DNA of 64,000 nucleotides from IMG/VR virus record IMGVR_UViG_3300023202_000383, positions 192,508 to 256,507 of that record; one strand, 5' to 3'. Position 1 is the stretch's first letter, and each line of letters begins with the position of its first letter. Below the pieces are notes generated by a model. That model was not told the DNA's origin. It was given only the letters and a program-made list of their open reading frames with translations, and made no database searches. Positions 3,944-20,699 of the stretch are shown here, piece after piece. A program made the position numbers and the translations under genes.

Positions 3944-3962
3944 AGGCGTGAAAAGATAAATT

Positions 3963-4592: not shown

Positions 4593-4657
4593 ACGGGGAT
4601 CGAACCCGCAGCCTTTCGCGTGACAAGCGAATGATCTTCCACTTGATCTTCTAGGGC
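4585..4657 (-). tRNA. tRNA-Asp(GTC)
   Basis: GCCCTAG/CTAGGGC acceptor, TTCGC-TTGTCAC-GCGAA anticodon arm, TTCGATC T-loop. Confidence 0.93.
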
Positions 4658-5547: not shown

Positions 5548-5568
5548 AATATCTCCTTATTGATTGAA

Positions 5569-5639
5569 TCCGCCCGGATGGAGTTGAACCAACGTCGGAC
5601 CGTTATCAGCGGTCTGCTCTACCGTTGAGCTACGGGCGG
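5569..5639 (-). tRNA. tRNA-Ile(GAT)
   Basis: CCGCCCG/CGGGCGG acceptor, GACCG-CTGATAA-CGGTC anticodon arm. Confidence 0.92.
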
Positions 5640-5714
5640 TTAAACTTGATCTATTAACTTCTGAATTCTTTTATAGGAATTGTAACAACTCTGAAGCTAG
5701 ATAGAAATAATAAA

Positions 5715-5797
5715 CACGCCGGGTAGGATTCGAACCTACAGGCCCTTTGCGGGCACGGTTTTGGAGACCGCTTGGCTCACCAATGCACTGCCGACGT
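5715..5797 (-). tRNA. long-variable-arm tRNA with Trp (CCA) anticodon
   Basis: ACGTCGG/CCGGCGT+G73; GCGGT-CTCCAAA-ACCGT; V-arm GCCC-GCAAA-GGGC; T-arm GTAGG-TTCGAAT-CCTAC; weak D-stem and C8. Confidence 0.8.
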
Positions 5798-5811
5798 ATA
5801 AGAATGGGGAA

Positions 5812-5884
5812 TGGACCTGGAGGGATTCCAACCCTCGACCTCTTCCTTGCAAGGGAAGCGTTCTCGCTACTGAACTACAGGCCC
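5812..5884 (-). tRNA. tRNA-Ala(TGC)
   Basis: GGGCCTG/CAGGTCC with G3:U70; CTTCC-CTTGCAA-GGAAG; T-loop TTGGAAT. Confidence 0.9.
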
Positions 5885-5917
5885 AAAATCGCAAACCGCA
5901 ATTGAAATTAAATCCAA

Positions 5918-5989
5918 TGGAGCCATTGGGATTCGAACCCAAGATTCTACCATGCCATGGTAGCGTGATCCCTGTTTCACCATAGCCCC
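5918..5989 (-). tRNA. tRNA-Ala(GGC)
   Basis: GGGGCTA/TGGCTCC with G3:U70; CTACC-ATGGCAT-GGTAG (A32-U38, typical of bacterial Ala-GGC). Confidence 0.93.
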
Positions 5990-6041
5990 ATGTGATAGGG
6001 CTTTTTATTACGCGACGCCCCGAATTCCACAAATACCGCAT

Positions 6042-6731
6042 TCAGTTTTTGTTTGCGTTGGCTTGTTCGCTAACATCCTCCCATTTTTCCCATTCTGCTT
6101 CTAGTTTGTCTCTCGGCAAATCTGGTAGGTGGTGCATGTGTATTACTTTTGGTCTAGCAACTAATTTAAAGTTTGACGACCTAACATTCCATTCTGGCGA
6201 AAGTTTTTGTACGTTTATGTCTCTGTTGAATATTAGGTGGTTTAGAACAGATTGGTCCGATGTCCACCCTTCTTGTTCACCTATCTCATTATATCTATCT
6301 ATTGCTTCGTCTAAAACATTTATCACTCTGTCATTCATCCTATAAAATATTACACCAGTATTTAAGTGGCCTGGGTTATATCCCAAAAACAGTTTCTTGT
6401 CGTAATCAACACTCATATCTTTAGCTGCTGCGATATCAAAATTAAACCACATCACATCTTCTGGCCGACTTAGTATCTCGGTATCTGAATCGAAGAAAAC
6501 TGTTTGGTCATATGGTGATGCTCGTAATGCTCGGAGTTTTGTCAAACCCCAATTATCATCCTGCTCTATTGGTCTCTGAGTTATTTTCATAGATCCTGCC
6601 AGGGGCAGAATCGCGTCTGTGAATATGGTTATTGGTATATCACTCAGTTTCCTTAGGCTTGCTATGCTATGCAAAGCCCATCTATTGTACATTTCTCCAG
6701 TAGCAATATAAACAGCCCCATATGTCGCCAT
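6042..6731 (-). CDS. glycosyltransferase, GT8-like
   Basis: FFDSDTEI, NTGVIFY, SDQSVLN, WNVR, IHMH motifs. Confidence 0.8.
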   Translation of the reverse strand: MATYGAVYIATGEMYNRWALHSIASLRKLSDIPITIFTDAILPLAGSMKITQRPIEQDDNWGLTKLRALRASPYDQTVFFDSDTEILSRPEDVMWFNFDIAAAKDMSVDYDKKLFLGYNPGHLNTGVIFYRMNDRVINVLDEAIDRYNEIGEQEGWTSDQSVLNHLIFNRDINVQKLSPEWNVRSSNFKLVARPKVIHMHHLPDLPRDKLEAEWEKWEDVSEQANANKN

Positions 6732-6740
6732 TATTTAAGT

Positions 6741-6917
6741 TCATTCTCCTCTGATTGCTTTATTTATTGACTTAGCCATATCTTTTACTAACTTCTCTTG
6801 TAAGTCAGTACCATGCAGCTTTTTAAGATTTTGTGTGGTTTCAAATGTCCATACTCCCATCAACTTACGTTCTTTTACAAATCGTTTGTAAATTTGATGT
6901 AGTAGACTTCCCCACAT
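6741..6917 (-). CDS. 58-aa protein resembling an internal segment of T4-type major capsid protein gp23
   Basis: Hand-translated ORF absent from the track: ...ERKLMGVWTFETTQNLKKLHGTDLQEKLVKDMAKSINKAI. Confidence 0.6.
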   Translation of the reverse strand: MWGSLLHQIYKRFVKERKLMGVWTFETTQNLKKLHGTDLQEKLVKDMAKSINKAIRGE

Positions 6918-6922
6918 ATCAA

Positions 6923-7273
6923 TTAAATACCGTCGCGGCTGCGGCGGGTATCCGACTCCGCGAGTGAATCGGCGATTTCGGTATTCTTGTGTGGGTATTC
7001 GCTGTCGAACTCAACAAGTAGTGCCAGTTGACTCCGCTCGTAACGCAAATGAGTATTGTCTAGATGCTCGAGCAAATTCAGCCAGAGTTCGTATCCCGCG
7101 CCAGTGACGTTGCAGTCTTTCGCTTCGACAACGAGCTTTTTCAGCGGGGATCGGCGCTCATCCAGTTCAATTGCGTATTCGTTTAGAATCTCTTGCACCT
7201 GCGAGGTGTCATCGAGCGTCCCCGAGAGCGTGATCCTCCGAGGTCCTCGAATGAGTTTGAATTTTTCAGCCAT
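6923..7273 (-). CDS. hypothetical protein, possibly STAS-like
   Basis: GC-rich ORF from ATG 7273; ITLSGTLDD...LVVEAKDC pattern loosely STAS-like. Confidence 0.5.
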   Translation of the reverse strand: MAEKFKLIRGPRRITLSGTLDDTSQVQEILNEYAIELDERRSPLKKLVVEAKDCNVTGAGYELWLNLLEHLDNTHLRYERSQLALLVEFDSEYPHKNTEIADSLAESDTRRSRDGI

Positions 7274-7347
7274 CTGTCTTCTCCTTCTCATTCTACGATT
7301 TTGGTTGAGACTCTTGGGATGCCGCAACCATTGTGATTGTAGCAGTT

Positions 7348-7785
7348 TCAGGTACTCTTAGGCCGAATGGATCGAAGATTCTTGTATTTCTCAAAATGAG
7401 GGCTGTCTTCTGGAATGAACAAATGATCGTGTGGCTGCATGTAGCGGATCGCGAAAGCAAGCACCGGACACGTGAGCACCGACTTCCACCGGGGATTGTA
7501 AACGGCGGGGGATCCACATCCATGGTAGAACTGGCCAAGCATGAGGCCCACATCTATAAAGATCGGCTTGATCTGGTCATATAATCTGTCAATCGGCTCG
7601 CATGGTTTGCCTTTGGCTAGCGGGTAGCTGTCGAAAAACGTGAGAAAGGTCTTCAGGTTTGTCGGGTCGGCCGGCATGCCATCTCGGTCGACGTCATGTA
7701 CGGGTTCTGTACGAAGAAAAAGCTCGATTTGTTCACACAGCTCTGTCTCAATATTGGCGCAGAAATTGTTGGGGCACGTTTCTTG
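7348..7785 (-). pseudogene. 5'-truncated GC-rich gene (DUF6875-like C-terminal half)
   Basis: Frame is open 7785-7348 but has no start at its 5' end; GLMLGQFY...NP...PVLAFAIRYMQPHD recalls DUF6875. Confidence 0.45.
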
Positions 7786-8050
7786 TTATATCTTCAGCTG
7801 CTTCTTGTTGATAAAAATAACTTGATACTACTAAATCCCACGGGTTTCTTACGAATGCGAATTTGAAATATTCTTCCCAACACCCAATATGTTCTTTTAA
7901 TTTAGACGCTGGTACATGGTGAGCATATGGCGAGTTAGGATCATTTTTTGATCGTATATCTGAATAATCATTCAGCGCATATCTAATGCTGCTACTGCCG
8001 GTCTTAGGTATAGCAATGAATATGAATTTGTACTTGTGTGACAGCCTCAC
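7748..8050 (-). pseudogene. sulfotransferase family 2, N-terminal fragment
   Basis: FIFIAIPKTGSSSI (5'-PSB loop) and FKFAFVRNPWDLVVSSYFY (3'-PB), then premature end at 100 aa. Confidence 0.7.
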
Positions 8051-8253
8051 TTGGCCAATTCTTCTAGCGGGGCACCATTTTCGTCTGCTATGATAATTCT
8101 ATGACCTTGTTCTTGGTGCTTCCTGATATAGTCGAAGGCCACCACCGATCTTCGTACAACTTCTCCCGGTGCGATATTTTGGTCTAATGCACGCTGTTCG
8201 ACAATTTCTTCAGCTTCACCTGTTAGGTTAACATTCATCTTCTTATCCTCCAC
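8047..8253 (-). CDS. ribbon-helix-helix-like DNA-binding protein
   Basis: MNVNLTGEAEEIVEQRA...GEVVRRSV beta-alpha-alpha pattern. Confidence 0.5.
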   Translation of the reverse strand: MEDKKMNVNLTGEAEEIVEQRALDQNIAPGEVVRRSVVAFDYIRKHQEQGHRIIIADENGAPLEELAK

Positions 8254-8270
8254 AATATATTTGTGGAGGA

Positions 8271-8663
8271 CTATTTGGAACTACATCTCTTTGCTATTGC
8301 TTCATAATAGATTTTGGCTTTTTCATACATATCTCTTTCCAGCCAGTGCAGTCTGCAAAATACACCGAGCAGAAAGATTCTCTTAAAGTTGTTCTCCATC
8401 TCCCCGTCGTAACCATATGCGAATTTTTTCTTTTCTATATCGAACACGACTGACGAAACTGGGTCCAGCTCGGCCTCTACTCGTCCATCGGGAAGTGCTG
8501 TGAGCGTACTGTATGATACACCGCACGCCGGATCATCGACAGAAATATAAAGCTTTTTGGCTTCCGGGTTTTCTATATCATATTTTATTTTATCATCATC
8601 AATCCAAATCAAGTTCATACCAAATGGGCCAGCGTCAGTGGATATTGTTATGCTAGTGTTCAT
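8271..8663 (-). CDS. hypothetical protein, tandem paralog family (W-x-D-D...D-x-x-(D/N)-P)
   Basis: LIWIDDDKIKYDIENPEAKKLYISV motif shared with neighbours. Confidence 0.65.
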   Translation of the reverse strand: MNTSITISTDAGPFGMNLIWIDDDKIKYDIENPEAKKLYISVDDPACGVSYSTLTALPDGRVEAELDPVSSVVFDIEKKKFAYGYDGEMENNFKRIFLLGVFCRLHWLERDMYEKAKIYYEAIAKRCSSK

Positions 8664-9027
8664 TATTGCTCGCTATTAATTCCAGATATTCTTTGGCACT
8701 TTTATTAAATAATTTTATGTTGTGCTTATCAAATATTATCGGAAAGTTTGTGAGGCTAGTATACACTCTGCTGTTTCTGGTCTGCGCCCATACTCTGTTT
8801 TCAATATCTATTAAATATCCACATTCTACTAAGTAATCGAATGATTTACCAAACGATACATAAATATGGCGTGCCTTCGGATTATCAACATCGAACCTTA
8901 CATTTATATTATCTAGCCATGCCAATTTTATGTCATATAAATCGCCACCAACATAGCATTTATATACGCCATTTATGGCAGTAGGTGCGCCGTCAACGTC
9001 AATCAGAAAAATATTACTCATTGCCAT
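8653..9027 (-). CDS. hypothetical protein, tandem paralog family
   Basis: LAWLDNINVRFDVDNPKARHIYVSF. Confidence 0.65.
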   Translation of the reverse strand: MAMSNIFLIDVDGAPTAINGVYKCYVGGDLYDIKLAWLDNINVRFDVDNPKARHIYVSFGKSFDYLVECGYLIDIENRVWAQTRNSRVYTSLTNFPIIFDKHNIKLFNKSAKEYLELIASNNEH

Positions 9028-9442
9028 AGTATTTATTCGTGTTCTTTTTGAGAAACGTTTCTGTAGTTTCTAATAGTTGCTCAAAATACTCTCTTCTGAA
9101 TCCGTTTTTTGACCATTTGGTGCTTATGTCTTCCCACCCCTTAATTTGTGGTCTTACATCATGTATTGTGTGTTTATGTGTACCACCTGATTTTCTAAGC
9201 TCTCCATCATAATGGACTGCAGAGATCCGTTTGTTAATGATGTCAATTACCCAGCATATAGGCTTATGGATTTGCACACACACTAATTCAGCGTCCGGAT
9301 TGTCAACGTCTTTTCTGACATATCCATTGTCATCAATCCATACTAATTCCATTTCGTTGATATATAATACCCTATTGAACAGGCTGTATTTTCTTGAACT
9401 CATTGGTATCGCCCTCGTGTCCGCAATCAGGGCAGCTACCAA
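9014..9442 (-). CDS. hypothetical protein, tandem paralog family
   Basis: LVWIDDNGYVRKDVDNPDAELVCVQI; true start probably downstream of 9442. Confidence 0.6.
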   Translation of the reverse strand: MVAALIADTRAIPMSSRKYSLFNRVLYINEMELVWIDDNGYVRKDVDNPDAELVCVQIHKPICWVIDIINKRISAVHYDGELRKSGGTHKHTIHDVRPQIKGWEDISTKWSKNGFRREYFEQLLETTETFLKKNTNKYYGNE

Positions 9443-9677
9443 TCATTTCGTTCATTGATGTGTCTGGGTGTATTTCTTTGCATGTGGCTTTTTCAGAACC
9501 ACAATTTGGGCATTTGTAATATGTAGGAGTAAACTCCATATGTGTGATTGACCCGTCATCTTCGATATTCAAGCCTAGGGAATTTGCGAATTTTTTGAAC
9601 CCAGGTGTAATCGATTCTGGGTCTAGCTTATTTGTTTCCTCTGACAGTACCTTATCAAGTTTATCTTTATAGTCCAT
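9372..9677 (-). CDS. zinc-ribbon protein
   Basis: CPNCG...CPDCGH. Confidence 0.6.
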   Translation of the reverse strand: MDYKDKLDKVLSEETNKLDPESITPGFKKFANSLGLNIEDDGSITHMEFTPTYYKCPNCGSEKATCKEIHPDTSMNEMIGSCPDCGHEGDTNEFKKIQPVQ

Positions 9678-9975
9678 CGTTGTTCCCTAAACGTTTTAAA
9701 GAAAATTCAGCGTCTGCTATATATGGACCTATAGTAGCAGGATCTGACTCCCAGCCGCATATTTGCATGGCGTCTGGCCCATCGGTTATTTTGGCTGGGC
9801 CATTGTAATATTCCATGACTCTAGATGCTCTCTTATTTTCTATATCTACTACAACTATTGATGTCCAATAGTTAATTAGAACACATATAGCTTCTGAATC
9901 CGGATCATCAATGTCATGGCGGATCCGCCCATCGTCATCAACCCATACTAAACAGTTGTCCAATTTATAAAACAT
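9667..9975 (-). CDS. hypothetical protein, tandem paralog family
   Basis: LVWVDDDGRIRHDIDDPDSEAICVLI. Confidence 0.65.
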   Translation of the reverse strand: MFYKLDNCLVWVDDDGRIRHDIDDPDSEAICVLINYWTSIVVVDIENKRASRVMEYYNGPAKITDGPDAMQICGWESDPATIGPYIADAEFSLKRLGNNDGL

Positions 9976-10018
9976 TATTGATTGGAGGTTCGAAACTGTG
10001 CTTTGCCATATATTTGAA

Positions 10019-10289
10019 CTCCCCTGCCTGGACTTGAACCAGGAACCTAGCGGTTACAGCTACCCGGAAATTTCTATCCGGACTGGACTTTCTCTTGGCC
10101 ATGTCTTTCGATTTAGGCCCATCCCGTAAAGTCTCTACACTTGCCCGGCTTTCGCCTGCTAGCTCGGTCGGGATTACCATGCCATTATGGGTTAGGCTTC
10201 CCCGAATTAGGGATGTTTTCACCATGTAGTTTCCTACATGGGCTGCAATTGTTTACAGCCGCTCGCTCTACCAATTGAGCTACAGAGGA
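10019..10289 (-). tRNA. tRNA-Asn(GTT), intron-containing (exons 10255-10289 and 10019-10056)
   Basis: TCCTCTG/CAGGGGA+G73; joining exons gives AGCGG-CTGTTAA-CCGCT. Confidence 0.9.
10057..10254 (-). mobile_element. group I intron (198 nt, no ORF) at tRNA position 35/36
   Basis: 5' exon ends in U; P1 GGCUGU/GCAGCC with U.G wobble; core AAUUCGGGGAA, AAUCCCGAC, GUAGAGACUUUACG, GAAAGUCCAGUC; terminal G. Confidence 0.88.
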
Positions 10290-10461
10290 ATATATTGATT
10301 TAGTTGGTGGCTGCCTTACCAAGTCGGCCATCCGCCAAAATTCATCGATCATTCGCAATACTCATTCGTTGGGCAAAGAACCACACCATATGGTGCTTTG
10401 CAGTCAGGACACGCTACACGAGCGATTCCCTCATTCCGCACCGACCGTTTCATGGCTTCCT

Positions 10462-10935
10462 TCAATACGGACTTTTGCTATCAAATCTTTTCCTAATGTT
10501 CATTATGTAATCTATGACAGCTATTATTTTGTCGATCACTTTTTGCGGATCATAATTTGGGTCGACATAGTCTCCAAATGGGAAATCGAAGATTGCACCG
10601 GCATTAATATCTATTATCACATGAAATTTGTTGGGGTCTCCGGTTCCGTCGTTAGTAATGTTTATATTTATTGAGCCCATTTCTGACATTATTGAAAGTC
10701 GATAAGTTTCGGCTTCTTCAAGAGCGAATTGGTCAGAGTTGTCAATTAGTTCAAAAACTGGCATTTTACTTGGTGGATACCATAAGTCCACCCTCTGGTA
10801 AAATCGATTCCTGACTTCCTTTAATATCAGCTTAGCCGTCCGCAACTTTGGTTCTCGTTTTACTCGTTTTACTGGCTTGCAGCTTCTTGACCTGCAATAA
10901 CAATCAACTGGGCATTTATATGGACCAGATGGCAT
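10462..10935 (-). CDS. hypothetical protein, DPxF(D/N)P family
   Basis: C-terminal DYVDPNYDPQKVIDKII. Confidence 0.6.
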   Translation of the reverse strand: MPSGPYKCPVDCYCRSRSCKPVKRVKREPKLRTAKLILKEVRNRFYQRVDLWYPPSKMPVFELIDNSDQFALEEAETYRLSIMSEMGSININITNDGTGDPNKFHVIIDINAGAIFDFPFGDYVDPNYDPQKVIDKIIAVIDYIMNIRKRFDSKSPY

Positions 10936-10959
10936 GTGCTATTAGTTCGGGCAGCTCTA

Positions 10960-11421
10960 TTATGATCCCATTTCAAATCCCATTAATTTGACATTGCTGT
11001 GTGGGGTGTTTGGTTTCTCGTAAATGTTCTCCAAAAACTTATGGTGGAAGTCTTTGGTTGTGTGAATCATCTCGTTGGCTAGCAATGCAACTTCTAGCCA
11101 TGTTGGGTCTTCAACTACGTCGCTCGTGTAAGGTTTGCCACCGCCAGATAACCACCCATGTTGTAATTCTTCAAACACCACTCTTCCTTCAACGGCGATA
11201 TCGTCGAGGTTGCTTAATGGGATTTTAAAAATGTTGTTTTTATATGTCTGGTAATACCCGCAATATATAACCTTGGGTTCAAAAAGAGAATTTTCCATTA
11301 TGTGTCTGATGACAAAGAATCTGTTGATTTTCCAATATAGCCAATTGTCGATGCTATATAATTTGTGGATGATCCAGTCAATAATGTTCGATATTTTGAT
11401 TTCTTTGAATTCAAAATTCAT
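10960..11421 (-). CDS. hypothetical protein
   Basis: 153-aa ORF tightly packed with neighbours. Confidence 0.6.
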   Translation of the reverse strand: MNFEFKEIKISNIIDWIIHKLYSIDNWLYWKINRFFVIRHIMENSLFEPKVIYCGYYQTYKNNIFKIPLSNLDDIAVEGRVVFEELQHGWLSGGGKPYTSDVVEDPTWLEVALLANEMIHTTKDFHHKFLENIYEKPNTPHSNVKLMGFEMGS

Positions 11422-12277
11422 TGATTATTATACCATATATATCGTCGCTGATCATCGTCGGATTTAAACACAATATGTAATTGGCAAGATTAGAGTTGCC
11501 GTGGACAAAATGATTGCACCTTGACAATAGTATAGAGTCCACCAATGCTTCTTTACCCATTTCATACGGGTCGCCAGCCGCATTTGCATGCGGTTCTCCG
11601 TCGTGCAGTCTTATCGCTGGCGTTGTTTGTATTCTTTTGCCGTACCTATCTGACATTCTATTTACCACAACCTGTGCATCTGTTCCGAGCAATATGTTGG
11701 CATCTGGATGCTTGTGCAGATACTTGTCTATTTTGCTCATATATAGATGATATGGCGGATTGCCCACATTAAGCAACTTGTTTAGGTATGGGACACCACC
11801 ATGTATCCTGCCTGGGCCTCTAATATGAACTCCAATTGTGTGACCACTTACTAAGTCACTATTAGAATCTGCTGCAGCAATAATTTCATCCCTAAATGGC
11901 AGATATTTGTTTATTATCTTGTTCGGTTTGTATCGATCTTTAGGTGGCAACAAGATTGTTGCCGGACCGTTGTATCTTTCTGGTTCTGGTATAGTAGGTC
12001 CGGTCCGTCGCATTATTCTATGCTGCGGATATGCTTCGAATATATCGATGTCATTTCTGGTATTGTTCGAGTCTAAAACATCGTTAAATGTGTGGTCTAT
12101 ACGATAAAAATATTGATCCCACGTATCGCCTGGTCCACCGGCGTTGTAATACTTGCTATTCCAATATGGCATTATGATAATATTATTATTGTCACCATAA
12201 GAAAACGCGGTAACTGCTCTACTTATCACAACTCCTATGCCATTGTTGGCAGTAAGTGTAACGCGTAACTTATTCAT
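11411..12277 (-). CDS. NodZ/GT23-like fucosyltransferase
   Basis: TIGVHIRG, ILLGTDAQ, EALVDSILLSRCNHFVHGNSN motifs of the GDP-fucose-using superfamily. Confidence 0.75.
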   Translation of the reverse strand: MNKLRVTLTANNGIGVVISRAVTAFSYGDNNNIIIMPYWNSKYYNAGGPGDTWDQYFYRIDHTFNDVLDSNNTRNDIDIFEAYPQHRIMRRTGPTIPEPERYNGPATILLPPKDRYKPNKIINKYLPFRDEIIAAADSNSDLVSGHTIGVHIRGPGRIHGGVPYLNKLLNVGNPPYHLYMSKIDKYLHKHPDANILLGTDAQVVVNRMSDRYGKRIQTTPAIRLHDGEPHANAAGDPYEMGKEALVDSILLSRCNHFVHGNSNLANYILCLNPTMISDDIYGIIINEF

Positions 12278-12594
12278 TGTGTTAAATTAGACAGGTATCG
12301 TGATATCATTTCTGTATCATATCTCGGTTTATAATATTTATCGATCTTTGATAATTTGATAACCCATTCGATCAGTTCCTGGGGGTTGAAATTGGGGTCT
12401 GTTATGTCATAATCTTTGCGCAGCGGGCACGCTGTCGCCCATCTTTGAACAATAGTTTCACTGTTAGATATCCTAGCGAGTTCATGCCCAATACCAGTTG
12501 CCTTAATTCTAGTATGGTCATTTAATCTCCATACATGTGTGCATGGAAGTTGGTCTGATATAGCACACGCGATTTCTAAGTGGAATTGCTTCAT
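12274..12594 (-). CDS. hypothetical protein, DPxF(D/N)P family
   Basis: YDITDPNFNPQELIEWV. Confidence 0.6.
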   Translation of the reverse strand: MKQFHLEIACAISDQLPCTHVWRLNDHTRIKATGIGHELARISNSETIVQRWATACPLRKDYDITDPNFNPQELIEWVIKLSKIDKYYKPRYDTEMISRYLSNLTQ

Positions 12595-12718
12595 AATGGG
12601 GAGATTACGCTCGCCGCTTTTTGGCCATTGCGAAGTTGGCTATCCATGCCGCCTCCCCGATAACTACTGATACATATGTGCGAAGCACATAATAATTTAT
12701 GTGTCAAACATAACTTAA

Positions 12719-12804
12719 CAGCGGCTGTAGGATTCGAACCTACGTGGGGCTTGTAGCCCTGCAGCTTCAAAGGCTGCCGCGATCGTCCACTCCGCCAAGC
12801 CGCT
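12719..12804 (-). tRNA. long-variable-arm tRNA with Gln (TTG) anticodon
   Basis: AGCGGCT/AGCCGCT+G73; D-arm GCG-GAGTGGACGAT-CGC; GCAGC-CTTTGAA-GCTGC; V-arm GGGCT-ACA-AGCCC; T-arm GTAGG-TTCGAAT-CCTAC. Confidence 0.88.
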
Positions 12805-12814
12805 AGGTGCAAAA

Positions 12815-13505
12815 ATGAGCAAATTAGATAATATTCCAAAAGATAGGTTTATAAAAACATATGAATCGTCTGAATCAATAAGCGATATGCTGCTAAAAAT
12901 GCGGATTAATTGCCGCTGGCGGAAACTATAAGACTCTTAAAAATAGACTCAAAATCTATGATCTTGACTACGACGAGCTTAAAAGCCGAGGACGTAATTC
13001 AGCAAATTCTAAGCTGATTACAAATAAAGGCGTGCCACTAGATGAAATTATGGTGGAAAATTCAACATATAAAAGAAGTAGCTTAAAACATAGGATCATA
13101 AGATCTGGAATAATTCCATATAAATGCGCTATCTGTGACCAGAATTCAACATGGCGCGGCGAGAATCTTACATTAATTCTAGATCATATCAATGGTGTTG
13201 GTAATGATCATAGAAAAGAGAATTTGAGATTCTTATGTCCAAATTGCAACAGCCAAACTCCAACATTTGCTGGTCGGAACATAGATTGGTCTGGTACAAA
13301 AAATAAGTGTGTCGATTGCAATAATATCATTACTAGAAAAGCGTTAAGATGTCCAAAATGTAATAGTATAAATAGGCGTAAAATCGAGTGGCCAGACAAT
13401 TTATCAGATTTGGTTGCTGAGTCGTCTAAATTAGCGGTTGCAAAATCTCTTGGAGTATCTAATGTTGCCGTTGCGAAACGCCTAAAGTATATAAACCAAG
13501 TTTAG
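12815..13505 (+). CDS. HNH homing endonuclease (apparent +1 frameshift at about 12902)
   Basis: CAICDQ...LILDHINGVGNDHRKENLRFLCPNCNSQT. Frame from ATG 12815 joins the 13032 frame if one base at 12902 is removed (KMGLIAAGGNYKTLK). Confidence 0.8.
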
Positions 13506-13517
13506 CTGCCTATTACA

Positions 13518-14183
13518 CTACGGGCCAATAGTGTTAAAACTCTTACATCTGTTCAGTCTCTTGCACGGCGTGCACTTCATGCATCGTTTGTATCCGGTCA
13601 TTTCCACAGTGTGGATGAAGTCTGGGCTTTCACAAACCCATAGTTTATTTAATATCGGTTTATTAAGTTTCTTTTCTATCTTCTTCAAATAGCTTATAAT
13701 GTGACCTTTGTGCGTGTTGATAAATGGCGTATATAGCGTTGGTGTGTGAGTATCTTCAAAGCTCATTAATTCCCAATGCGCTCTAAGCAGGTCTATTATG
13801 TCATTTATGTAATCTCTCGCTTCGTCGCCTCTATTGTATCCAACACAAATCTGATCGGCCTCGTGTTCCCCTGCAGCAAAAGCAGCTGCTTGTATCCACA
13901 GTGGTGGTTGAGAAAAACCATCTTTGGGCCGCCCGTAAACACTGATTTCAGTATTTACGAATTTTACTCTTTTATCGCATATTTGAAGATCTATATGGTA
14001 ATTGTCGTCATAGATCGATTCTAGATATTTTACTACCTGCCTTTCGCACCAGGCTTTGCCCGCATTGGCAGGCGACAGATCTACATATAAAGCGATAATT
14101 TTATCGGTAGTTTCCTCTAGAAGCTTGAAGAAGCAAGCTGTTGAGTCTAGGCCACCCGATAAAAGCAGAATAGTAGTCTTCAT
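13518..14183 (-). CDS. queC: QueC-like PP-loop ATPase (7-cyano-7-deazaguanine synthase family)
   Basis: MKTTILLLSGGLDST PP-loop, C-terminal WVCE...CMKCTPC zinc site; ATG 14183 (the track extension reads through tRNA-Glu). Confidence 0.72.
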   Translation of the reverse strand: MKTTILLLSGGLDSTACFFKLLEETTDKIIALYVDLSPANAGKAWCERQVVKYLESIYDDNYHIDLQICDKRVKFVNTEISVYGRPKDGFSQPPLWIQAAAFAAGEHEADQICVGYNRGDEARDYINDIIDLLRAHWELMSFEDTHTPTLYTPFINTHKGHIISYLKKIEKKLNKPILNKLWVCESPDFIHTVEMTGYKRCMKCTPCKRLNRCKSFNTIGP

Positions 14184-14185
14184 AA

Positions 14186-14257
14186 TGCTCCCAAGGGGAA
14201 TCGAACCCCTATTTCCTGCGTGAAAAGCAGGTGTCCTAGCCGTTAGACGATGGGAGC
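14186..14257 (-). tRNA. tRNA-Glu(TTC)
   Basis: GCTCCCA/TGGGAGC, CCTGC-TTTTCAC-GCAGG, TTCGATT T-loop. Confidence 0.93.
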
Positions 14258-14399
14258 ATATCGCCCCGTGCATACTCAACGGGGCGTTAGTAATAATCCA
14301 ACCTCGCTAGCTGGCTGACCTGGGCAACAGGTACCTTTACAACCCTGCCGGGAACTCCAGCATCGCAAGGATATGAACTTGTCAAAGATCACTTCTTAA

Positions 14400-14471
14400 T
14401 GGGTCAGACCGGGATTGAACCAGTGTCTCACGGGCTTCAACCGTGCGCTCTACCAACTGAGCTACTGACCC
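14400..14471 (-). tRNA. tRNA-Phe(GAA)
   Basis: GGGTCAG/CTGACCC, CACGG-TTGAAGC-CCGTG. Confidence 0.93.
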
Positions 14472-14529
14472 AAGACGCCCTGTGGCGTCTTATGCGATCG
14501 CCTTGTTGGCGATTTTGCTAATATTCTCC

Positions 14530-14949
14530 TTAAACTCCTTCAAAAGCGTTCCGGCTGCTTAAGGTCCCAGTACGCTCCTTCATCGCTCGCGGAACCTCTT
14601 CTCCAAGAAACTTCTCAAGCTCTTCGGGTGTATCGAACATGTGAGCGTTATTGGCTAACGTTACGCACATATTCTTTACGCTCTCGTCGTCTGCGTCTTC
14701 CCAAGAGTCGCATCCGCTGCATGATCCGTAGTAGTCAGTAAGGACTACAAGCTTGAAGAAGTCTGGTCCATACCAAACAGCATAAATATAGCCAACCATT
14801 CCCTGATAATCACCAGAGCAGTATTCGGCAATGACCATAGAATCCTTGAATAGGGATTCCATGATTTCAGTATGTCCGCCAGCATAACGCGGCTGAATCA
14901 TGATCTTGTCCCAATCCAACATATCTTTCAACATCAAATCGGCCATCAT
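14530..14949 (-). CDS. hypothetical protein
   Basis: GC-rich ORF; GGGAGG RBS before ATGATG at 14949. Confidence 0.7.
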   Translation of the reverse strand: MMADLMLKDMLDWDKIMIQPRYAGGHTEIMESLFKDSMVIAEYCSGDYQGMVGYIYAVWYGPDFFKLVVLTDYYGSCSGCDSWEDADDESVKNMCVTLANNAHMFDTPEELEKFLGEEVPRAMKERTGTLSSRNAFEGV

Positions 14950-14959: not shown

Positions 14960-15000
14960 ATAAAACAACGACCTTGCCCGGATTTACCGAGCAAGGTCGT
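14960..15000 (-). terminator. intrinsic terminator-like hairpin in the leader of the 14949 gene
   Basis: Perfect 10-bp stem ACGACCTTGC/GCAAGGTCGT followed by TGTTTTATT on the minus strand. Confidence 0.6.
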
Positions 15001-15133
15001 CAGTGGAGTAGTGGAATTGCTCGGTGAAGTTACGTCCTATTATCCTGGATATAGGCGTTATCTGCATTCGCTTCTTCAGCGAACCAGATTTGGCCAAATT
15101 GGATAAAGTTACGCATCATTTCGAGATCCTCAA

Positions 15134-15208
15134 TAGCGGGTACCAGTACCGCCCTGGTCTATCTTGGTCATGAGCCAAGCCTCTGCGCTCTATGCCGAGT
15201 CACCCGCG
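15134..15208 (-). ncRNA. tRNA-like cloverleaf with CAT anticodon loop and non-canonical T-loop
   Basis: 75 nt: GCGGGT/ACCCGC, CTC/GAG, CTTGG-CTCATGA-CCAAG, ACCAG-GGCGGTA-CTGGT. Confidence 0.6.
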
Positions 15209-15343
15209 TCATAAATTACTTTTGCCTAAAATACGTCGTCTGTTATGGCGCATCTTTGTTTTGCAAGAAATTATATAGGTCAGATGATTTTTATCAATCG
15301 TTTTGTAATGCATCTGTGCGATATCTAATAACGGAGAAAAATC

Positions 15344-16385: not shown

Positions 16386-19300
16386 GTGGCAGAACTTAAG
16401 GACTTCCATAACCCATCTTTTGTGGCGTGGCCACTATTTACTGACAGAACTGCCTATAAACCATTTGGGCAGCCTGTAATTCTTGTAGTGCCCCACGTCA
16501 GGGATGAAGAAGGCCGCAAATTTGCTAACAGCCTTCCCAGGCGAGTAAGCGTATGTATAGAAGAAGGCCCCGATCGGTGCCCAGTCGTCCAAAACCCAGG
16601 CGTTTTTTCTCCAGATTTAGATATATTCACCGTAGACCTCAATGAGAGGCAATTACTAGATCGCAAGATAGATCTAAATACTGTACAATATATAAATAGT
16701 GACGGAGATCTGCTCCCATCAGGGACGCAATGCGACCAAGCAGACATAGACAATAATGAGTGTCGATTTAGGTACACCACCAGAACTGGTTTAGTTGATG
16801 ATATATTATTCCTGAGCCATGCCGATTATTTTGATCTATCGGACATATTGTTGCCGACTGATTCTCTGCCTCCCGGCTTATATAATTTAGTTTATAAGGT
16901 TGATTTTAATGTAAGAAAAGTCAATGAAGACACTGACACATTTGTTTGTGTTGATCCAGATAATTTCAGAATCATCAGATCAACTTTCTTGTTCAATCAT
17001 CCAGGAGACGTCCTCCTGCAGATGGTTAATGGAACGCCAGCTCTTTACTTTACTGGTGAGTCTCGGTCTGATGATGAATTAATAGAATTCTATCGTCCGT
17101 TTTCGGATATACTGCAAGATATACACGATGAACAGAGATTTATCGAAGGCATAAATCATGTTTTTGATGTTCAATTCAATCTGATACCACACCTTGGCGC
17201 TTTGCTTGGGTGGGATATACCATATTTCCCGCGTTCGGCAGATAGTTTAAGGCGCGCTTTCCTTAGAAACACTGTCAGGTTCCAGAAGCTAAAGGGCACC
17301 AATCGTGTTGTCAGAGAATTGTTCGACCTGTTCGGATTCACTATAGATATCACCAACTTGTTCTGGTCCGCTGATGGATCGTCTTATGTTGGTCCTGGCG
17401 ATTCTACAAAACCTGAATTCATAATAGAGAAAAAGCAGGTTATAACAACAGAGCCAGTCTTGACAGAATACGATCAAGACGGATTCGGCAATCTAAATGT
17501 GCCGTTGCTGCGCAGGCCCGCTGAGGACTCCATAACTGTCAGGTCTTTTTTGGTTGAAGAAGGATCAGCAGCTGATGAAGAGCTCAAGAAAATAACTGGT
17601 GCATTGTCCGATGACATAGATAAATTCAATGACGAACTTAGGTCAGATGGGTGCGGCAATAGCCCAGCACAATCCATTCCGACAACGTTTATACCGGTCA
17701 CAATACCAGACGACGTAAGCACGGCAGTAGACAGTTTAGATGATGTGGCCGATCTTGATGGAGTTGCTGGCGATTCTACGATTTTTATCGGAGAAGATGG
17801 TAAAGCATCATCAATTAGGACGTCTAATCTTTCAACCGCACCGGTGTCGCTGACTAATATCAGGTTCGATTCAAACACCAACACTTTGTGTCTTGGGTTC
17901 GCTAGATATCTAGACTTCTCTGCTACTGGCACTGTCCTATATATTCTGGTGACCTATGGTTTTAATGACATAAGACCGCCAGAACAAATGGAGAACCTAC
18001 AGTCTAATAGGTTCGACATAGATATAGTCTTCAAGAACGGCCAGCTTCCAGATTCTGAGCTTCTTGAATTCTTGATCGACATGTTGTTTAAGGTCAAGGC
18101 ATTCCACTCGCTTTTGCGGGTTATCGGAATATCGTTTGATGATGAAACGATCGAAACGTACAATGTAAATGATTTGTGCGTCGGTGGTGACTTCTTGCAG
18201 AGATGTGACACTGACGCGGGCCAGTTGCAGGTTCCGCAAGAAGCCATAATACCGGAAGAATGCATACTGTCCTCCGACGATCCGTGTTTCACTATTCTTG
18301 AAGAGACATATGGATTCAGGGAACAAGATTTTACCTATAGAGATAGAGTTTTAAGAGGTCTTGAACAAGAATTCAATGCCTATAAAGCCCTAGACCCTAG
18401 AAATTGCAGGTTTACGCCTACCGGACAAGACAGGACCAAGGAGGACATAACTCAAGAAGTAGAGATCGAAGACGGCAAGAACACTTACTTTACCCCACAA
18501 AGAGAGTCTCTGTGTGATCTCGACGGTGATGACTTCTGTTATAGCGGAAGGGTTGCAGATCAGCTAATATTTCAGCCAACTATTCCATTCGTGGAAGTGT
18601 CCAGATTCAAGAAGTGCAGATTGAATCTGGGCGTTGGAGTATATTACACTTATCCAGCTCCAGATTGTGGGGTAAAGGTTCCGGGATTGCACTCTAGAGG
18701 AAGAAGTCTTCTGGGAAATACCCAGATAACCACACATGGTGCTACTAGAATATTCGGCAAATTCGATTCTACAGACCCTCCGAGATCTCTTTTGTATTCG
18801 GAACGTGGTGATCCAAGATTTGACAATTTGTTGGGTAACCTCACTAGATCATATGATGGGCTAATACCACAGGAATCCCGCAGCCTCCATTTCTCGGATG
18901 CATTATATTTAGAGAATTCGGTGTTCGCCAATCGACATCTGGCCATTCAGAGATTCCCTCTTGATGTTGAGAAAGACAATTTAGCATTCGCCCAACACAG
19001 ATTGCCGACACTCGGCAATCTCGAAAGCGATTTCACTCATTCAAGCTACAAGCTGAAACCACATGACGATGAATTAGAATGTGCATGCGAAATAAGATTT
19101 CCTAATAGCCTAGATGCAGAAATAACGATTGGGACCGATGGCGACGAATATCTATCGTATGATGACGAGTCATTCGCCATAGAGGCCAATGGTCTTCCAG
19201 CTGATATCTCGTCGTTAGGAACGCACGACACATCGACTTTCATAAATGCCGATGATGTCACACACAAAGTTTATTTGCAGCACGACAATGCTGGACTGTT

Positions 19301-20699
19301 AGACTCTGGCTTTAATCCATTTTTCGATCAGAATCTAGGCCATCCGTCCATAGAATTAGAATCAGCCATCGATTCTGTGTGCGTAATTGAGACAACCGAT
19401 CGTCCGATATTTAATTCAGCTGGCGTGTGCTCTTCTGGCGATATTAGCGATTACTCTGATGGCTATCCGGCAGTAAGTGGCTACCTGATGACTGATTTGG
19501 ATGATCAGGAATATTTCCCTGGCCTTAGTGACAAAGCCGCAGCTTGTTTAGAGAAGCTACTAGAAATTCCGGAAGAAATGGGCACTGGCTCTGATATACT
19601 GTTCTTACTGTCATCGCACATATTTGTAAATGATGGCGACGCTAGGTTTGGATTTTATAGACCATTCAGATTAGATTGTGGGTGCTTAACAATTGCGCCC
19701 GAATGTGATGAAGGCACTGGTGACTGCTTTGGTATTACCGTTCCTGATGACTGTCTTGGCGGAGCAGACTTTGACCAGGTAGAATTTGTAAACGATAGAA
19801 TGGCCCTTGAGGAGAATTTTGGTGCTAGGGATATATGCTTAGACGATCCAAATAGTAGCCTGTTCGAATTAAGACAATTACTAGACGGTACTGTGTCTCC
19901 TCGTGGAACACGAGGCGATGAGCCATTTCCACCGAACGGATCTTTTTCATTTAAAGACACATGGGGTACAATATTCGACGTCGAGTGGTCTACTACCGGA
20001 AACATATTTGAAATATCAATAACCACTAAGGAGCCTAGAATATGGGGCGAATCTTCACTAGATGGTGAAGTTGACAGTGGGACTGTGTTTAGAAGGGGAA
20101 TAAGAACAACTGTTGTTCAGAGATACAGAATCGTGGGGGACGAGTACGTGCTAATAGCGCATTCTTCGACTGCGCCGCCGCCTGTTCGAGGCGTGCCTGT
20201 AAGCTCAGATGTCGATCAAGACGTGATACAGTCTATAGATCTATTTGCACATTCCGGCAGAAATATATCATTCATTAATCCGTTCTTATTTAACTTAGAC
20301 TTTAGGATGCAAGATTGCTTCGGTGGACTCTCTATTCCTCTACATGAAGTTGATGAAGGACCGGCTTGGTCTGATGCAGACGACGACACAGATGGATTTA
20401 TATGGGCCGAACCGTGTGGGCTTGGTGGAACTGAACCTGGCGCACCTATAGGTGATTCTGATGTTACTGGGTTTGGATCTCTCGGCCCCATGTGCTGGTT
20501 GGATATATGGACCGAAGACGAAGAATGCGAATGTGCAATTATACCATCAAGTTCTAGCAGTGCAAGCAGCTCTAGCAGCTCTACTTCTAGTGCTAGCAGT
20601 TCGTCTAGTTCTGGTAGCAGCTCATCAGAATTTGATGTATGCGTGGAAATATTTGGGTCGTCAAGCTCTAGTGGGTCGTCGTCCAGTAGCTCGGCATAG
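16386..20699 (+). CDS. large virion structural protein (baseplate wedge / P2 gpI-like domain) with Ser-rich C-terminus
   Basis: LIPHLGALLGWDI...LRRAFLRN...KLKGTNRVVRELFDLFG matches the tail protein I pattern; acidic and Cys-rich; poly-Ser end. Confidence 0.7.
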   Translation: MAELKDFHNPSFVAWPLFTDRTAYKPFGQPVILVVPHVRDEEGRKFANSLPRRVSVCIEEGPDRCPVVQNPGVFSPDLDIFTVDLNERQLLDRKIDLNTVQYINSDGDLLPSGTQCDQADIDNNECRFRYTTRTGLVDDILFLSHADYFDLSDILLPTDSLPPGLYNLVYKVDFNVRKVNEDTDTFVCVDPDNFRIIRSTFLFNHPGDVLLQMVNGTPALYFTGESRSDDELIEFYRPFSDILQDIHDEQRFIEGINHVFDVQFNLIPHLGALLGWDIPYFPRSADSLRRAFLRNTVRFQKLKGTNRVVRELFDLFGFTIDITNLFWSADGSSYVGPGDSTKPEFIIEKKQVITTEPVLTEYDQDGFGNLNVPLLRRPAEDSITVRSFLVEEGSAADEELKKITGALSDDIDKFNDELRSDGCGNSPAQSIPTTFIPVTIPDDVSTAVDSLDDVADLDGVAGDSTIFIGEDGKASSIRTSNLSTAPVSLTNIRFDSNTNTLCLGFARYLDFSATGTVLYILVTYGFNDIRPPEQMENLQSNRFDIDIVFKNGQLPDSELLEFLIDMLFKVKAFHSLLRVIGISFDDETIETYNVNDLCVGGDFLQRCDTDAGQLQVPQEAIIPEECILSSDDPCFTILEETYGFREQDFTYRDRVLRGLEQEFNAYKALDPRNCRFTPTGQDRTKEDITQEVEIEDGKNTYFTPQRESLCDLDGDDFCYSGRVADQLIFQPTIPFVEVSRFKKCRLNLGVGVYYTYPAPDCGVKVPGLHSRGRSLLGNTQITTHGATRIFGKFDSTDPPRSLLYSERGDPRFDNLLGNLTRSYDGLIPQESRSLHFSDALYLENSVFANRHLAIQRFPLDVEKDNLAFAQHRLPTLGNLESDFTHSSYKLKPHDDELECACEIRFPNSLDAEITIGTDGDEYLSYDDESFAIEANGLPADISSLGTHDTSTFINADDVTHKVYLQHDNAGLLDSGFNPFFDQNLGHPSIELESAIDSVCVIETTDRPIFNSAGVCSSGDISDYSDGYPAVSGYLMTDLDDQEYFPGLSDKAAACLEKLLEIPEEMGTGSDILFLLSSHIFVNDGDARFGFYRPFRLDCGCLTIAPECDEGTGDCFGITVPDDCLGGADFDQVEFVNDRMALEENFGARDICLDDPNSSLFELRQLLDGTVSPRGTRGDEPFPPNGSFSFKDTWGTIFDVEWSTTGNIFEISITTKEPRIWGESSLDGEVDSGTVFRRGIRTTVVQRYRIVGDEYVLIAHSSTAPPPVRGVPVSSDVDQDVIQSIDLFAHSGRNISFINPFLFNLDFRMQDCFGGLSIPLHEVDEGPAWSDADDDTDGFIWAEPCGLGGTEPGAPIGDSDVTGFGSLGPMCWLDIWTEDEECECAIIPSSSSSASSSSSSTSSASSSSSSGSSSSEFDVCVEIFGSSSSSGSSSSSSA
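20547..20696 (+). repeat. Ser-rich low-complexity tract
   Basis: Encodes SSSSSASSSSSSTSSASSSSSSGSSSSE...GSSSSSGSSSSSSA with mixed Ser codons. Confidence 0.9.

What the first reader, a model, noticed from the sequence alone, without database searches (positions are those of the whole stretch)
15134..15208. tRNA mimic with a CAU anticodon loop but no TpsiC loop
Seen: CGCGGGU-GA-CUC-(13 nt)-GAG-G-CUUGG-CUCAUGA-CCAAG-AUAG-ACCAG-GGCGGUA-CUGGU-ACCCGCU-A. It is 75 nt, all four stems pair, and C1:U72 is mismatched as in initiator tRNAs. The T-loop is GGCGGUA and the fMet three-GC anticodon stem is absent. Stems are intact while the loops needed for ribosome/EF-Tu use are changed, which suggests selection for shape. 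Known: host toxins and anticodon nucleases (for example VapC) cut tRNA-fMet. Inference: a decoy RNA for such nucleases, or a sensor domain of the leader.
Basis: partly seen in the sequence, partly recalled or inferred. Interest (0 to 1): 0.7.

Follow-up and report, generated by a model that had tools for sequence, protein, structure and literature searches.

The report
Unusual phage initiator tRNA gene
The 75-nt cloverleaf is real and belongs to a conserved, mostly phage-borne family of initiator-type methionine tRNAs with a rebuilt "elbow" that standard tRNA finders miss, so it is more likely a working tRNA than a decoy.

Summary
Window 15208-15134 (minus strand) folds into a 75-nt cloverleaf with 19 Watson-Crick pairs, a CAU anticodon, a C1xU72 mismatch, A73 and the T-loop GGCGGUA. 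ARAGORN at default settings and Rfam's tRNA model both miss it. A strict cloverleaf descriptor found none in 100 shuffles of the window.

It is not a one-off. Pattern scans plus a covariance model found the same design in five other distinct phage contigs and three bacterial MAG contigs: N1-GCGGG, CUCAURA, GGCGGUA, CCCGC-N72-A73. The anticodon, T and D stems covary fully (98.6% of cells paired, 14 of 19 pairs changed on both sides).

Across a wider set of phage and Patescibacteria initiator-like tRNAs, U55 goes with GG in the D-loop and G55 goes with AG. The elbow looks rebuilt, not lost.

Three further points favour a working tRNA:
- Two phage members encode CCA.
- In one Candidatus Zambryskibacteria MAG this type is the only initiator-type tRNA found.
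- Two distant syntenic phages carry a canonical initiator tRNA at the same position.

Best reading: a non-canonical but functional phage initiator tRNA gene (confidence about 0.6). The decoy, pseudogene and leader readings remain possible. No expression data were available.

The parts
15134..15208 (-). Initiator-type tRNA(CAU) gene with a non-canonical elbow. Acceptor 15208-15202 and 15141-15135. D-arm 15199-15181. Anticodon arm 15179-15163, with CAU at 15172-15170. Variable loop 15162-15159. T-arm 15158-15142, with T-loop GGCGGUA at 15153-15147. Discriminator A at 15134.
   Evidence: Sequence. Strict cloverleaf descriptor. Covariance model R1 and family covariation.
15270..15297 (-). Sigma-70-like promoter, TTGATA-16 nt-TATAAT (11 of 12 matches). 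It would start transcription about 55 nt upstream of the tRNA 5' end.
   Evidence: Consensus scan. Prediction only.
15030..15119 (-). 29-codon ORF with a GAGGA ribosome-binding site, starting 15 nt after the tRNA 3' end. It is probably co-transcribed. Whether it codes is unproven.
   Evidence: No family match. Weak positional parallel in L016.
14966..15002 (-). Strong intrinsic-terminator-like hairpin (16 pairs plus a U run) that closes a unit of about 300 nt: promoter, tRNA, small ORF.
14530..14949 (-). Downstream gene of about 139 aa, a viral family of unknown function (phrog_12588). Homologs in L016 and L064 also lie just downstream of an initiator tRNA. This gene is the synteny anchor.

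Best explanation
This is a real gene for a structurally non-canonical initiator-type methionine tRNA, carried by a jumbo phage that also encodes 35 ordinary tRNAs.

Proposed mechanism (inferred, not shown):
1. It is transcribed from its own sigma-70-like promoter.
2. The ends are trimmed as for the phage's other tRNAs. None of them encodes CCA and all are followed by T or TT, so CCA must be added after transcription.
3. MetRS charges it through CAU, A73, G2:C71 and C3:G70.
4. It serves as an initiator, using the 1:72 mismatch and the G30:C40 and G31:C39 pairs.

The usual D-loop/T-loop elbow (G18-Psi55, T54-A58) appears replaced by an alternative one: A18 with G55, G19:C56 kept, a purine-purine G54/G58 pair, and A60. 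The alternative is conserved across a mostly phage-borne family.

Why phages keep this variant is unknown. The likeliest benefit is an initiator tRNA supply that host elbow-reading factors treat differently from the host's own initiator.
For: 1. The cloverleaf is not chance: 0 hits in 100 shuffles.
2. Family. The same T-loop, acceptor and anticodon loop occur in phage contigs L177, L180, L181, L182 (identical to L185) and L184, and in MAG contigs L332, L338 and L352.
3. Covariation. 98.6% of cells are paired, 14 of 19 pairs change on both sides, no shuffle of 500 reaches this, and slid controls give 35-48% paired (the wider set agrees).
4. Tertiary covariation. Among 116 phage GCGGG...CCCGCUA CAU tRNAs, 91 of 92 with U55 have GG in the D-loop. 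Of 23 with G55, 17 have only AG. The Patescibacteria initiators show the same pattern. The window has AUAG with G55.
5. Tail. CCA is encoded after A73 in L177 and L184. The window's 3' trailer starts with TT, like the phage's other 35 tRNA genes.
6. MAG G001 has 38 tRNAs. Its only initiator-type one is of this kind, with its own promoter and terminator in a chromosomal context.
7. Synteny. L016 and L064 carry canonical initiator tRNAs just upstream of homologs of the 140-aa gene. In L016 a tRNA-Glu(UUC) also follows.
8. The phage's two other CAU tRNAs are not initiator-like.
9. Two of three G:C pairs is the commonest state among phage initiator-like tRNAs.
10. Precedent: eukaryotic initiator tRNA has a purine-purine A54/A58 pair plus A60 (PMC7566577).
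Against: - No expression, processing or charging data. No RNA run was listed.
- The D-arm is the most aberrant in the family. The stem is only 3 bp and is flipped (CUC/GAG against GAG/CUC), the loop is 13 nt, G8 replaces U8, and U11:A24 replaces the initiator-typical A11:U24.
- The cloverleaf lies 4 kcal/mol above the predicted minimum-energy fold.
- The closest relatives are about 99.7% identical over the 8.4 kb compared, and identical across the 400-nt intergenic region, so they say nothing about constraint on this particular copy.
- The held record is about 70% complete, so a canonical initiator tRNA could lie in the missing part.
- The family alignment was fitted to the model, and the acceptor and loops were partly fixed by the search patterns. 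Only the stem covariation and the unrequested matches are independent evidence.
Confidence: 0.6

Rival explanations
1. A non-translating tRNA-like RNA. It would be made and folded like an initiator tRNA but act as bait or competitor for a host factor that attacks or marks initiator tRNA (a VapC-type nuclease, a GNAT acetyltransferase, or another tRNA-directed defence). Alternatively it could act as a regulator.
For: The family is mostly phage-borne: six distinct phage lineages including this one, against three contigs in the species-genome collection. The elbow contacts used by many tRNA-handling enzymes are changed. The A38-C39 step, where VapC is reported to cut, is kept. Phage tRNAs are known to counter tRNA-targeting defences (PMC10264068; PMC11464382).
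Against: Nothing here links the element to any nuclease or toxin gene. Encoded CCA, strict conservation of the MetRS and formylase determinants, and sole-initiator status in MAG G001 all fit a working tRNA better.
Confidence: 0.15
2. This copy is a recently inactivated pseudogene of an otherwise functional tRNA family, decaying inside the tRNA cluster.
For: It has the most deviant D-arm in the family (flipped 3-bp stem, 13-nt loop, G8, U11:A24). The cloverleaf is not the minimum-energy fold. The detectors miss it.
Against: All 19 stem pairs are Watson-Crick and every family-invariant nucleotide is intact. A near-consensus promoter lies upstream. The D-stem flip keeps all three pairs complementary, which is the opposite of decay. 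The sequence is identical in contigs from five samples.
Confidence: 0.12
3. A cis-acting leader or processing element. The tRNA shape would serve as an RNase P/RNase Z cleavage signal or a 5' stabiliser for the small ORF and the 140-aa gene downstream.
For: The 29-codon ORF's ribosome-binding site begins 6 nt after the discriminator. Promoter, tRNA, ORF and terminator form one compact unit. L016 has a small ORF at the same position.
Against: Family members sit in quite different contexts: next to tRNA-Cys, at the head of a tRNA cluster, or stand-alone with their own promoter and terminator. Conservation of CAU and of the identity nucleotides would not be needed for a processing signal.
Confidence: 0.08
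4. A chance cloverleaf in intergenic DNA.
For: The thermodynamic z-score is weak (-1.3).
Against: No hit in 100 shuffles. There are covarying homologs and a syntenic canonical initiator tRNA.
Confidence: 0.01

Closest known systems
Bacterial initiator tRNA (tRNA-fMet, e.g. E. coli metZWV/metY products)
   Same: CAU anticodon in a CUCAURA loop, an unpaired 1:72, A73, G2:C71, C3:G70, G4:C69, and the acceptor sequence N-GCGGG/CCCGC. G30:C40 and G31:C39 are kept. Canonical examples occupy the syntenic position in L016 and L064.
   Different: T-loop GGCGGUA in place of T-Psi-C-R-A-N-N. The D-loop lacks G18 (AG in place of GG). G8 replaces U8. U72 replaces A72. 29:41 is U:A. U11:A24 replaces A11:U24. 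Rfam's tRNA model and default ARAGORN do not detect it.
Eukaryotic cytoplasmic initiator tRNA (and eukaryotic tRNA-Ala(AGC)) T-loops with A54/A58 and A60
   Same: An initiator tRNA whose T-loop has a purine-purine 54/58 pair and a purine at position 60, in place of T54-A58 and a pyrimidine at 60 (PMC7566577). One phage relative, L249, even has AUCGAAA.
   Different: Here the pair is G54/G58, and position 55 is G where the eukaryotic form keeps Psi, with a matching A18. The context is bacterial or phage. The cited paper reports that such pairs were not seen in bacterial or archaeal tRNAs.
Phage-encoded tRNAs proposed or shown to bypass host tRNA-targeting defences (anticodon-loop variants, PMC10264068; T5 tRNA-Lys against PARIS, PMC11464382)
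   Same: A phage-borne variant of a host-essential tRNA, within a large phage tRNA set.
   Different: In those cases the changes are in the anticodon loop and the tRNAs are otherwise canonical. Here the anticodon loop is canonical and the elbow is changed. No defence link has been shown.
tRNA-like structures and mimics (tmRNA tRNA-like domain, YrlA, plant-virus 3' tRNA-like structures)
   Same: tRNA shape with departures from the tRNA consensus.
   Different: No Rfam family matched. This element has a complete anticodon arm with a conserved anticodon, and it has stand-alone tRNA-gene contexts.

Membership tests
tRNA (general; Rfam RF00005) | Cloverleaf geometry: 7-bp acceptor stem, 5-bp anticodon stem with 7-nt loop, 5-bp T stem with 7-nt loop, D stem | tested here: met
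   The D stem is only 3 bp. Stem covariation in relatives.
tRNA (general; Rfam RF00005) | Scores above the family's gathering threshold (29 bits), or is detected by ARAGORN | tested here: not met
   No RF00005 match even at E<=10. ARAGORN at default misses it. The phage relatives are missed too.
tRNA (general; Rfam RF00005) | Conserved elbow nucleotides U8, A14, G18-G19, T54-Psi55-C56, A58 | tested here: not met
   The element has G8, a D-loop with AG and no GG, and the T-loop G54 G55 C56 G57 G58 U59 A60. Only C56 and R57 are kept. The substitutions covary across relatives.
tRNA (general; Rfam RF00005) | U33 and a 7-nt anticodon loop with a purine at position 37 | tested here: met
   The loop is CUCAUGA.
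tRNA (general; Rfam RF00005) | Mature 3' CCA end and aminoacylation | not testable with these tools
   CCA is not encoded here, nor in any of the phage's 35 tRNA genes. The trailer starts with TT like theirs. CCA is encoded in relatives L177 and L184.
Bacterial initiator tRNA (tRNA-fMet) | CAU anticodon, A73, G2:C71, C3:G70 (MetRS and formylase determinants, from established knowledge) | tested here: met
   These positions are invariant in the family alignment.
Bacterial initiator tRNA (tRNA-fMet) | No Watson-Crick pair at 1:72 | tested here: met
   C1xU72. Position 1 varies among relatives (U, C, A or G opposite U72), so some relatives have a pair or a wobble there.
Bacterial initiator tRNA (tRNA-fMet) | Three consecutive G:C pairs at 29-31:39-41 | tested here: not met
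   The pairs are U29:A41, G30:C40 and G31:C39, so two of three. Two is the commonest state in 116 phage initiator-like tRNAs.
Bacterial initiator tRNA (tRNA-fMet) | A11:U24 in the D stem | tested here: not met
   The window has U11:A24. Several relatives (L184, L332) keep A11:U24.
Bacterial initiator tRNA (tRNA-fMet) | Occupies the genomic position of an initiator tRNA in relatives | tested here: met
   L016 and L064 have canonical initiator tRNAs just upstream of homologs of the 140-aa gene.
GGCGGUA-T-loop initiator-type tRNAs (group defined here) | N1-GCGGG acceptor, CUCAURA loop, T-loop GGCGGUA, CCCGC-N72-A73, AG in the D-loop, covarying D, anticodon and T stems | tested here: met
   No nuclease or toxin gene is linked in the neighbourhood, which holds a QueC-like gene, an HNH endonuclease, an HTH protein and unknowns.

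The most novel reading that the evidence does not exclude
A lineage of initiator tRNAs with a rebuilt elbow (A18 with G55, G54/G58, A60) circulates mainly in phages and is invisible to standard tRNA finders. It would give phages an initiator tRNA that host elbow-reading factors (tRNA nucleases, modification or quality-control enzymes, possibly ribosomal or RNase P contacts) treat differently from the host's own. That would amount to a counter-defence or takeover device acting at translation initiation. At least one ultra-small Patescibacteria genome has adopted the same design as its only initiator tRNA.
Probability: 0.3. Interest if true: 0.75.

Novelty: new variant of a known kind. Interest (0 to 1): 0.6.

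Why it matters
If these RNAs are working initiator tRNAs, several things follow.

- **tRNA structure.** The T54-Psi55 / G18 elbow is treated as near-universal. This would show it can be replaced by a different, co-evolving set of contacts in bacteria and phages, with a parallel to the purine-rich T-loop of eukaryotic initiators.
- **Annotation.** Neither ARAGORN nor the Rfam tRNA model finds the phage members, so phage and MAG tRNA inventories may be missing initiator tRNAs. This jumbo phage would otherwise be scored as lacking one.
- **Phage biology.** It raises a testable question: why do phages preferentially carry initiator tRNAs with altered elbows, and is the reason evasion of tRNA-directed host defences?

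Tried and rejected
**Searches that found no informative relative**
- Megablast and blastn of the 2-kb neighbourhood against GenBank phages: no match.
- The search for related loci with the 140-aa and the 201-aa neighbours in viral contigs: nothing.
- The 201-aa neighbour has no homolog other than itself.
- An exact 19-mer of the anticodon arm hit only unrelated coding DNA.
- Five contigs carrying the neighbour gene are essentially the same phage. Four are about 99.5-99.95% identical over up to 8.4 kb, and the 400-nt intergenic region is identical, so they give no covariation.
- More distant homologs of the 140-aa gene (L010-L012, L014, L015) are not syntenic and lack the element.
- The 301-kb contig behind L007 could not be searched for a canonical initiator tRNA.

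**Scans that were mostly noise or negative**
- The genome-contig scan gave 48 hits, about the number expected by chance. Only 3 were real by the covariance model.
- A degenerate T-loop pattern on G001 gave only noise.
- A sample of 401 Patescibacteria genomes held the R54-G55-C56-R57-R58-N59-A60 type only in G001.
- 101 Bacteroidota genomes had no G55-type initiator.

**Other dead ends**
- Thermodynamic folding alone does not support the cloverleaf.
- No RNA sequencing run was listed for the locus.
- The 140-aa neighbour has no assignable function from Pfam, PHROGs or the Atlas. It does not accompany the other family members.
- Five literature searches found no description of this T-loop type. 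That does not prove it is undescribed.

**Explanations considered and dropped**
- attP or integration-site remnant: the whole cloverleaf is present, and it lies deep inside phage DNA.
- tRNA-Ile2 (lysidine type) or elongator tRNA-Met: the acceptor stem is initiator-type.

Full report
**1. What is there**

- Acceptor stem: CGCGGGU / ACCCGCU, six Watson-Crick pairs under an unpaired C1xU72.
- Positions 8-9: GA.
- D-arm: a 3-bp stem (CUC/GAG) round a 13-nt loop.
- Anticodon arm: CUUGG-CUCAUGA-CCAAG, with CAU at 15172-15170.
- Variable loop: AUAG.
- T-arm: ACCAG-GGCGGUA-CUGGU.
- Discriminator: A.

ARAGORN finds nine ordinary tRNA genes in the window but not this one. Rfam's tRNA model gives nothing even at E<=10 on a 501-nt slice. 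With a loosened threshold ARAGORN reports a tRNA-Met(CAU) in a shifted register.

A strict descriptor asks for 19 Watson-Crick pairs in tRNA geometry. It hits only this element and tRNA-Glu in the real window, and nothing in 100 shuffles, both strands. The shape is therefore not chance.

Thermodynamics alone would not have shown this. The cloverleaf is -23.8 kcal/mol against a minimum-energy fold of -27.9, and the z-score is -1.3.

One detail of the finding needs correcting. Two of the three initiator G:C pairs are still present (G30:C40 and G31:C39).

**2. Setting**

The window is the last 64 kb of a 256.5-kb IMG/VR record classed as a provirus and estimated 70% complete. This is a jumbo phage with 35 tRNA genes.
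- Its two detected CAU tRNAs have paired 1:72 ends and non-initiator acceptor stems. The phage therefore has no canonical initiator tRNA in the part held.
- The element sits at the head of a minus-strand block. The order is: a near-consensus promoter (TTGATA-16 nt-TATAAT, 15297-15270), about 55 nt of leader, the element, a 29-codon ORF with a GAGGA ribosome-binding site (15119-15030), a strong terminator-like hairpin (15002-14966), a gene of about 139 aa of unknown function, then tRNA-Phe, tRNA-Glu and a QueC-like gene.
- None of the phage's tRNA genes encodes CCA, and all are followed by T or TT. The element is followed by TTGAGG.

**3. Relatives by synteny**

Close relatives are uninformative. 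Contigs from five samples carry the neighbour gene. Four of them match the window at about 99.5-99.95% over up to 8.4 kb, and all are identical across the intergenic region where they cover it.

The 140-aa neighbour has more distant homologs. Two of those loci are telling.
- In L016 (61% identical protein) a bona fide initiator tRNA lies about 170 nt upstream of the homolog. It scores 50.9 bits with Rfam and has an A1xA72 mismatch and three G:C pairs. A tRNA-Glu(UUC) follows, as in the window.
- In L064 an initiator tRNA with U1xU72 lies about 240 nt upstream.
- The 5' leaders of L016 and the window share short blocks, but the similarity is only marginally significant.

The element thus stands where related phages keep an initiator tRNA.

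**4. A family with the same odd T-loop**

I scanned IMG/VR for patterns built from the element's loops and acceptor, then scored the hits with a covariance model of the element (R1).
- The same design appeared in five further distinct phage contigs: L177, L180, L181, L182 (identical to L185) and L184.
- It also appeared in three contigs of bacterial MAGs: L332 (Candidatus Zambryskibacteria), L338 (Patescibacteria, with an insertion of about 50 nt) and L352 (Actinomycetota).
- The invariant features are positions 2-6 GCGGG with CCCGC opposite, A73 (usually after U72), the loop CUCAURA, and the T-loop GGCGGUA.
- The first scan did not ask for the 3' acceptor strand, and it turned out identical in L177.
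- The stems covary completely. On eight sequences, 98.6% of cells are paired and 14 of 19 pairs change on both sides. All five anticodon-stem pairs, all five T-stem pairs and all three D-stem pairs change on both sides. No shuffle of 500 reaches the observed values, and sliding the partner by 1-3 columns drops pairing to 35-48%. A wider set of ten gives the same picture.

Caveats: the alignment was fitted to the model, and the loops and part of the acceptor were fixed by the search patterns. The stem covariation is independent of both.

Rfam's tRNA model misses all the phage members at E<=1. ARAGORN misses them too.

**5. The elbow looks rebuilt, not lost**

A broader scan for phage CAU tRNAs of the form GCGGG...CCCGCUA gave 122 unique sequences.
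- About a quarter have T-loops with G at position 55, for example UGCAAUU, UGCGAAU, CGCAAYU, AGCGUUA, GGCAGCA and GGCGGUA.
- Of 92 well-folded ones with U55, 91 have GG in the D-loop.
- Of 23 with G55, 17 have only AG there. The other six have an AG next to an incidental GG.
- A sample of 141 Patescibacteria genomes shows the same coupling. About 17 have UGC- or GGC-type T-loops, nearly always with an xAGx D-loop. Those with UUC have xGGx.

This is covariation of the tertiary 18:55 contact, with the G19:C56 pair retained. The window fits the pattern, with AUAG in the D-loop and G55-C56 in the T-loop.

In the GGCGGUA and GGCAGCA loops, positions 54 and 58 are both G and position 60 is A. In the AGCGUUA type they are A54 and U58. 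A purine-purine 54/58 pair together with a purine at 60 is the known signature of eukaryotic initiator tRNA. It has been reported as not seen in bacterial tRNAs (PMC7566577).

**6. Signs that family members work as tRNAs**

- L177 and L184 encode CCA directly after A73, as do the ordinary tRNA genes beside them. Of 24 phage tRNAs whose position 55 is not U (23 G, 1 C), 18 encode CCA.
- In L332 the gene stands alone between a promoter-like site and a terminator. The neighbourhood is chromosomal, with a release factor and a sigma factor.
- That MAG (G001) yields 38 distinct tRNAs. Its only two CAU tRNAs are an elongator-like one and this one, and no canonical initiator was found. The MAG is small and may be incomplete.
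- The determinants that E. coli MetRS and formyltransferase use are all present in the window's copy: CAU, A73, G2:C71, C3:G70 and an unpaired 1:72. This rests on established knowledge.
- Having two of three G:C pairs is the commonest state among phage initiator-like tRNAs.

**7. Distribution**

The GGCGGUA type is rare in cells.
- Three contigs were found across the species-genome collection.
- One of 401 sampled Patescibacteria genomes has it.
- No G55-type initiator was found in 101 Bacteroidota genomes.

It was found in six distinct phage lineages including this one. The contexts are clearly viral: a PurZ-like gene in L177, and a tail fibre and an integrase in L182.

**8. Interpretation**

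The best reading is a functional, non-canonical initiator tRNA gene (about 0.6). The steps are transcription from its own promoter, end-trimming as for its neighbours, CCA addition, charging by MetRS, and use in initiation. All of these steps are inferred. None is shown.

Weak points of this particular copy:
- The D-arm is the most deviant in the family: flipped 3-bp stem, 13-nt loop, G8, and U11:A24 in place of A11:U24.
- There is no expression evidence.
- Part of the genome is unseen.

Rivals:
- A non-translating bait or regulator, about 0.15. It is compatible with the phage bias but has no direct support.
- A recently dead copy, about 0.12. Perfect stems and intact invariant positions argue against it.
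- A leader or processing signal for the small ORF, about 0.08. The varied contexts of the family argue against it.
- Chance, about 0.01.

**9. Novelty**

It is a tRNA, so the kind is known. Three things appear new:
- The particular elbow: A18 with G55, G54/G58 and A60.
- Its tertiary covariation and its bias toward phages.
- Its invisibility to the Rfam tRNA model and, for the phage members, to ARAGORN.

My searches of the open-access library found no description of it. That is not proof of absence. I rate it a new variant of a known kind.

Noticed in passing
window 5811-5885 (-): tRNA-Ala(UGC) has the D-loop AGUAGCGA and the T-loop UUGGAAU. The universal G19:C56 elbow pair appears flipped to C19:G56, yet the gene scores 68 bits with Rfam.
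   Followed up: partly
whole genome G000 (35 tRNA genes); window 3859-14472 for nine of them: No tRNA gene encodes CCA, and nearly all are followed directly by T or TT. This suggests RNase Z-type 3' processing followed by CCA addition in the host.
   Followed up: partly
window 15030-15119 (-): A 29-codon ORF with a GAGGA ribosome-binding site starts 15 nt after the tRNA. L016 has an ORF of about 30 codons at the same position, also beginning ATGCGT. Whether it codes is unproven.
   Followed up: partly
window 14530-14949 (-): A protein of about 139 aa from a viral family of unknown function (phrog_12588), with invariant R..AGGH and YYGSCSGCDSWE motifs. Of 167 homolog loci, 23 have tRNA genes within 1.5 kb. 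Three (the window, L016 and L064) lie just downstream of an initiator-type tRNA.
   Followed up: partly
L011 300-2100 and 9700-10100: An unrelated phage tRNA cluster has paired duplicates (Phe/Phe, Trp/Trp, Lys/Lys, Glu/Glu). One copy of each pair is 80-91 nt long. These may be intron-bearing or otherwise odd tRNAs.
   Followed up: no
G001 (Candidatus Zambryskibacteria MAG; loci L364-L396, L332): 12 of 38 tRNAs lack the canonical GUUCRA T-loop start: GUCCGA in seven, GUGCRA in three, GGGCGG in one and GUUUCGA in one. Psi55 is apparently dispensable in this organism.
   Followed up: partly
L338 2411-2521 (-): A GGCGGUA-type initiator-like tRNA in a Patescibacteria contig carries an insertion of about 50 nt in the D region. 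This may be an intron.
   Followed up: no
L249 3408-3480 (+): A phage CAU tRNA has the T-loop AUCGAAA, the same loop as eukaryotic initiator tRNA (A54, A60).
   Followed up: no
genome G000 132690-132764 (-) and 143995-144067 (+), outside the window: ARAGORN calls a 'tRNA-Stop(UUA)' on the strand opposite the surrounding tRNA cluster, and a tRNA with a 2-nt anticodon call. These may be a suppressor or an odd-loop tRNA, or false calls.
   Followed up: no
window 13032-13505 (+) and 13518-14183 (-): An HNH endonuclease gene and a QueC-like (7-deazaguanine pathway) gene are interleaved with the tRNA genes.
   Followed up: no
window 16386-20699 (+): A 1437-aa ORF with no family assigned here ends in a long serine-rich tail.
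   Followed up: no
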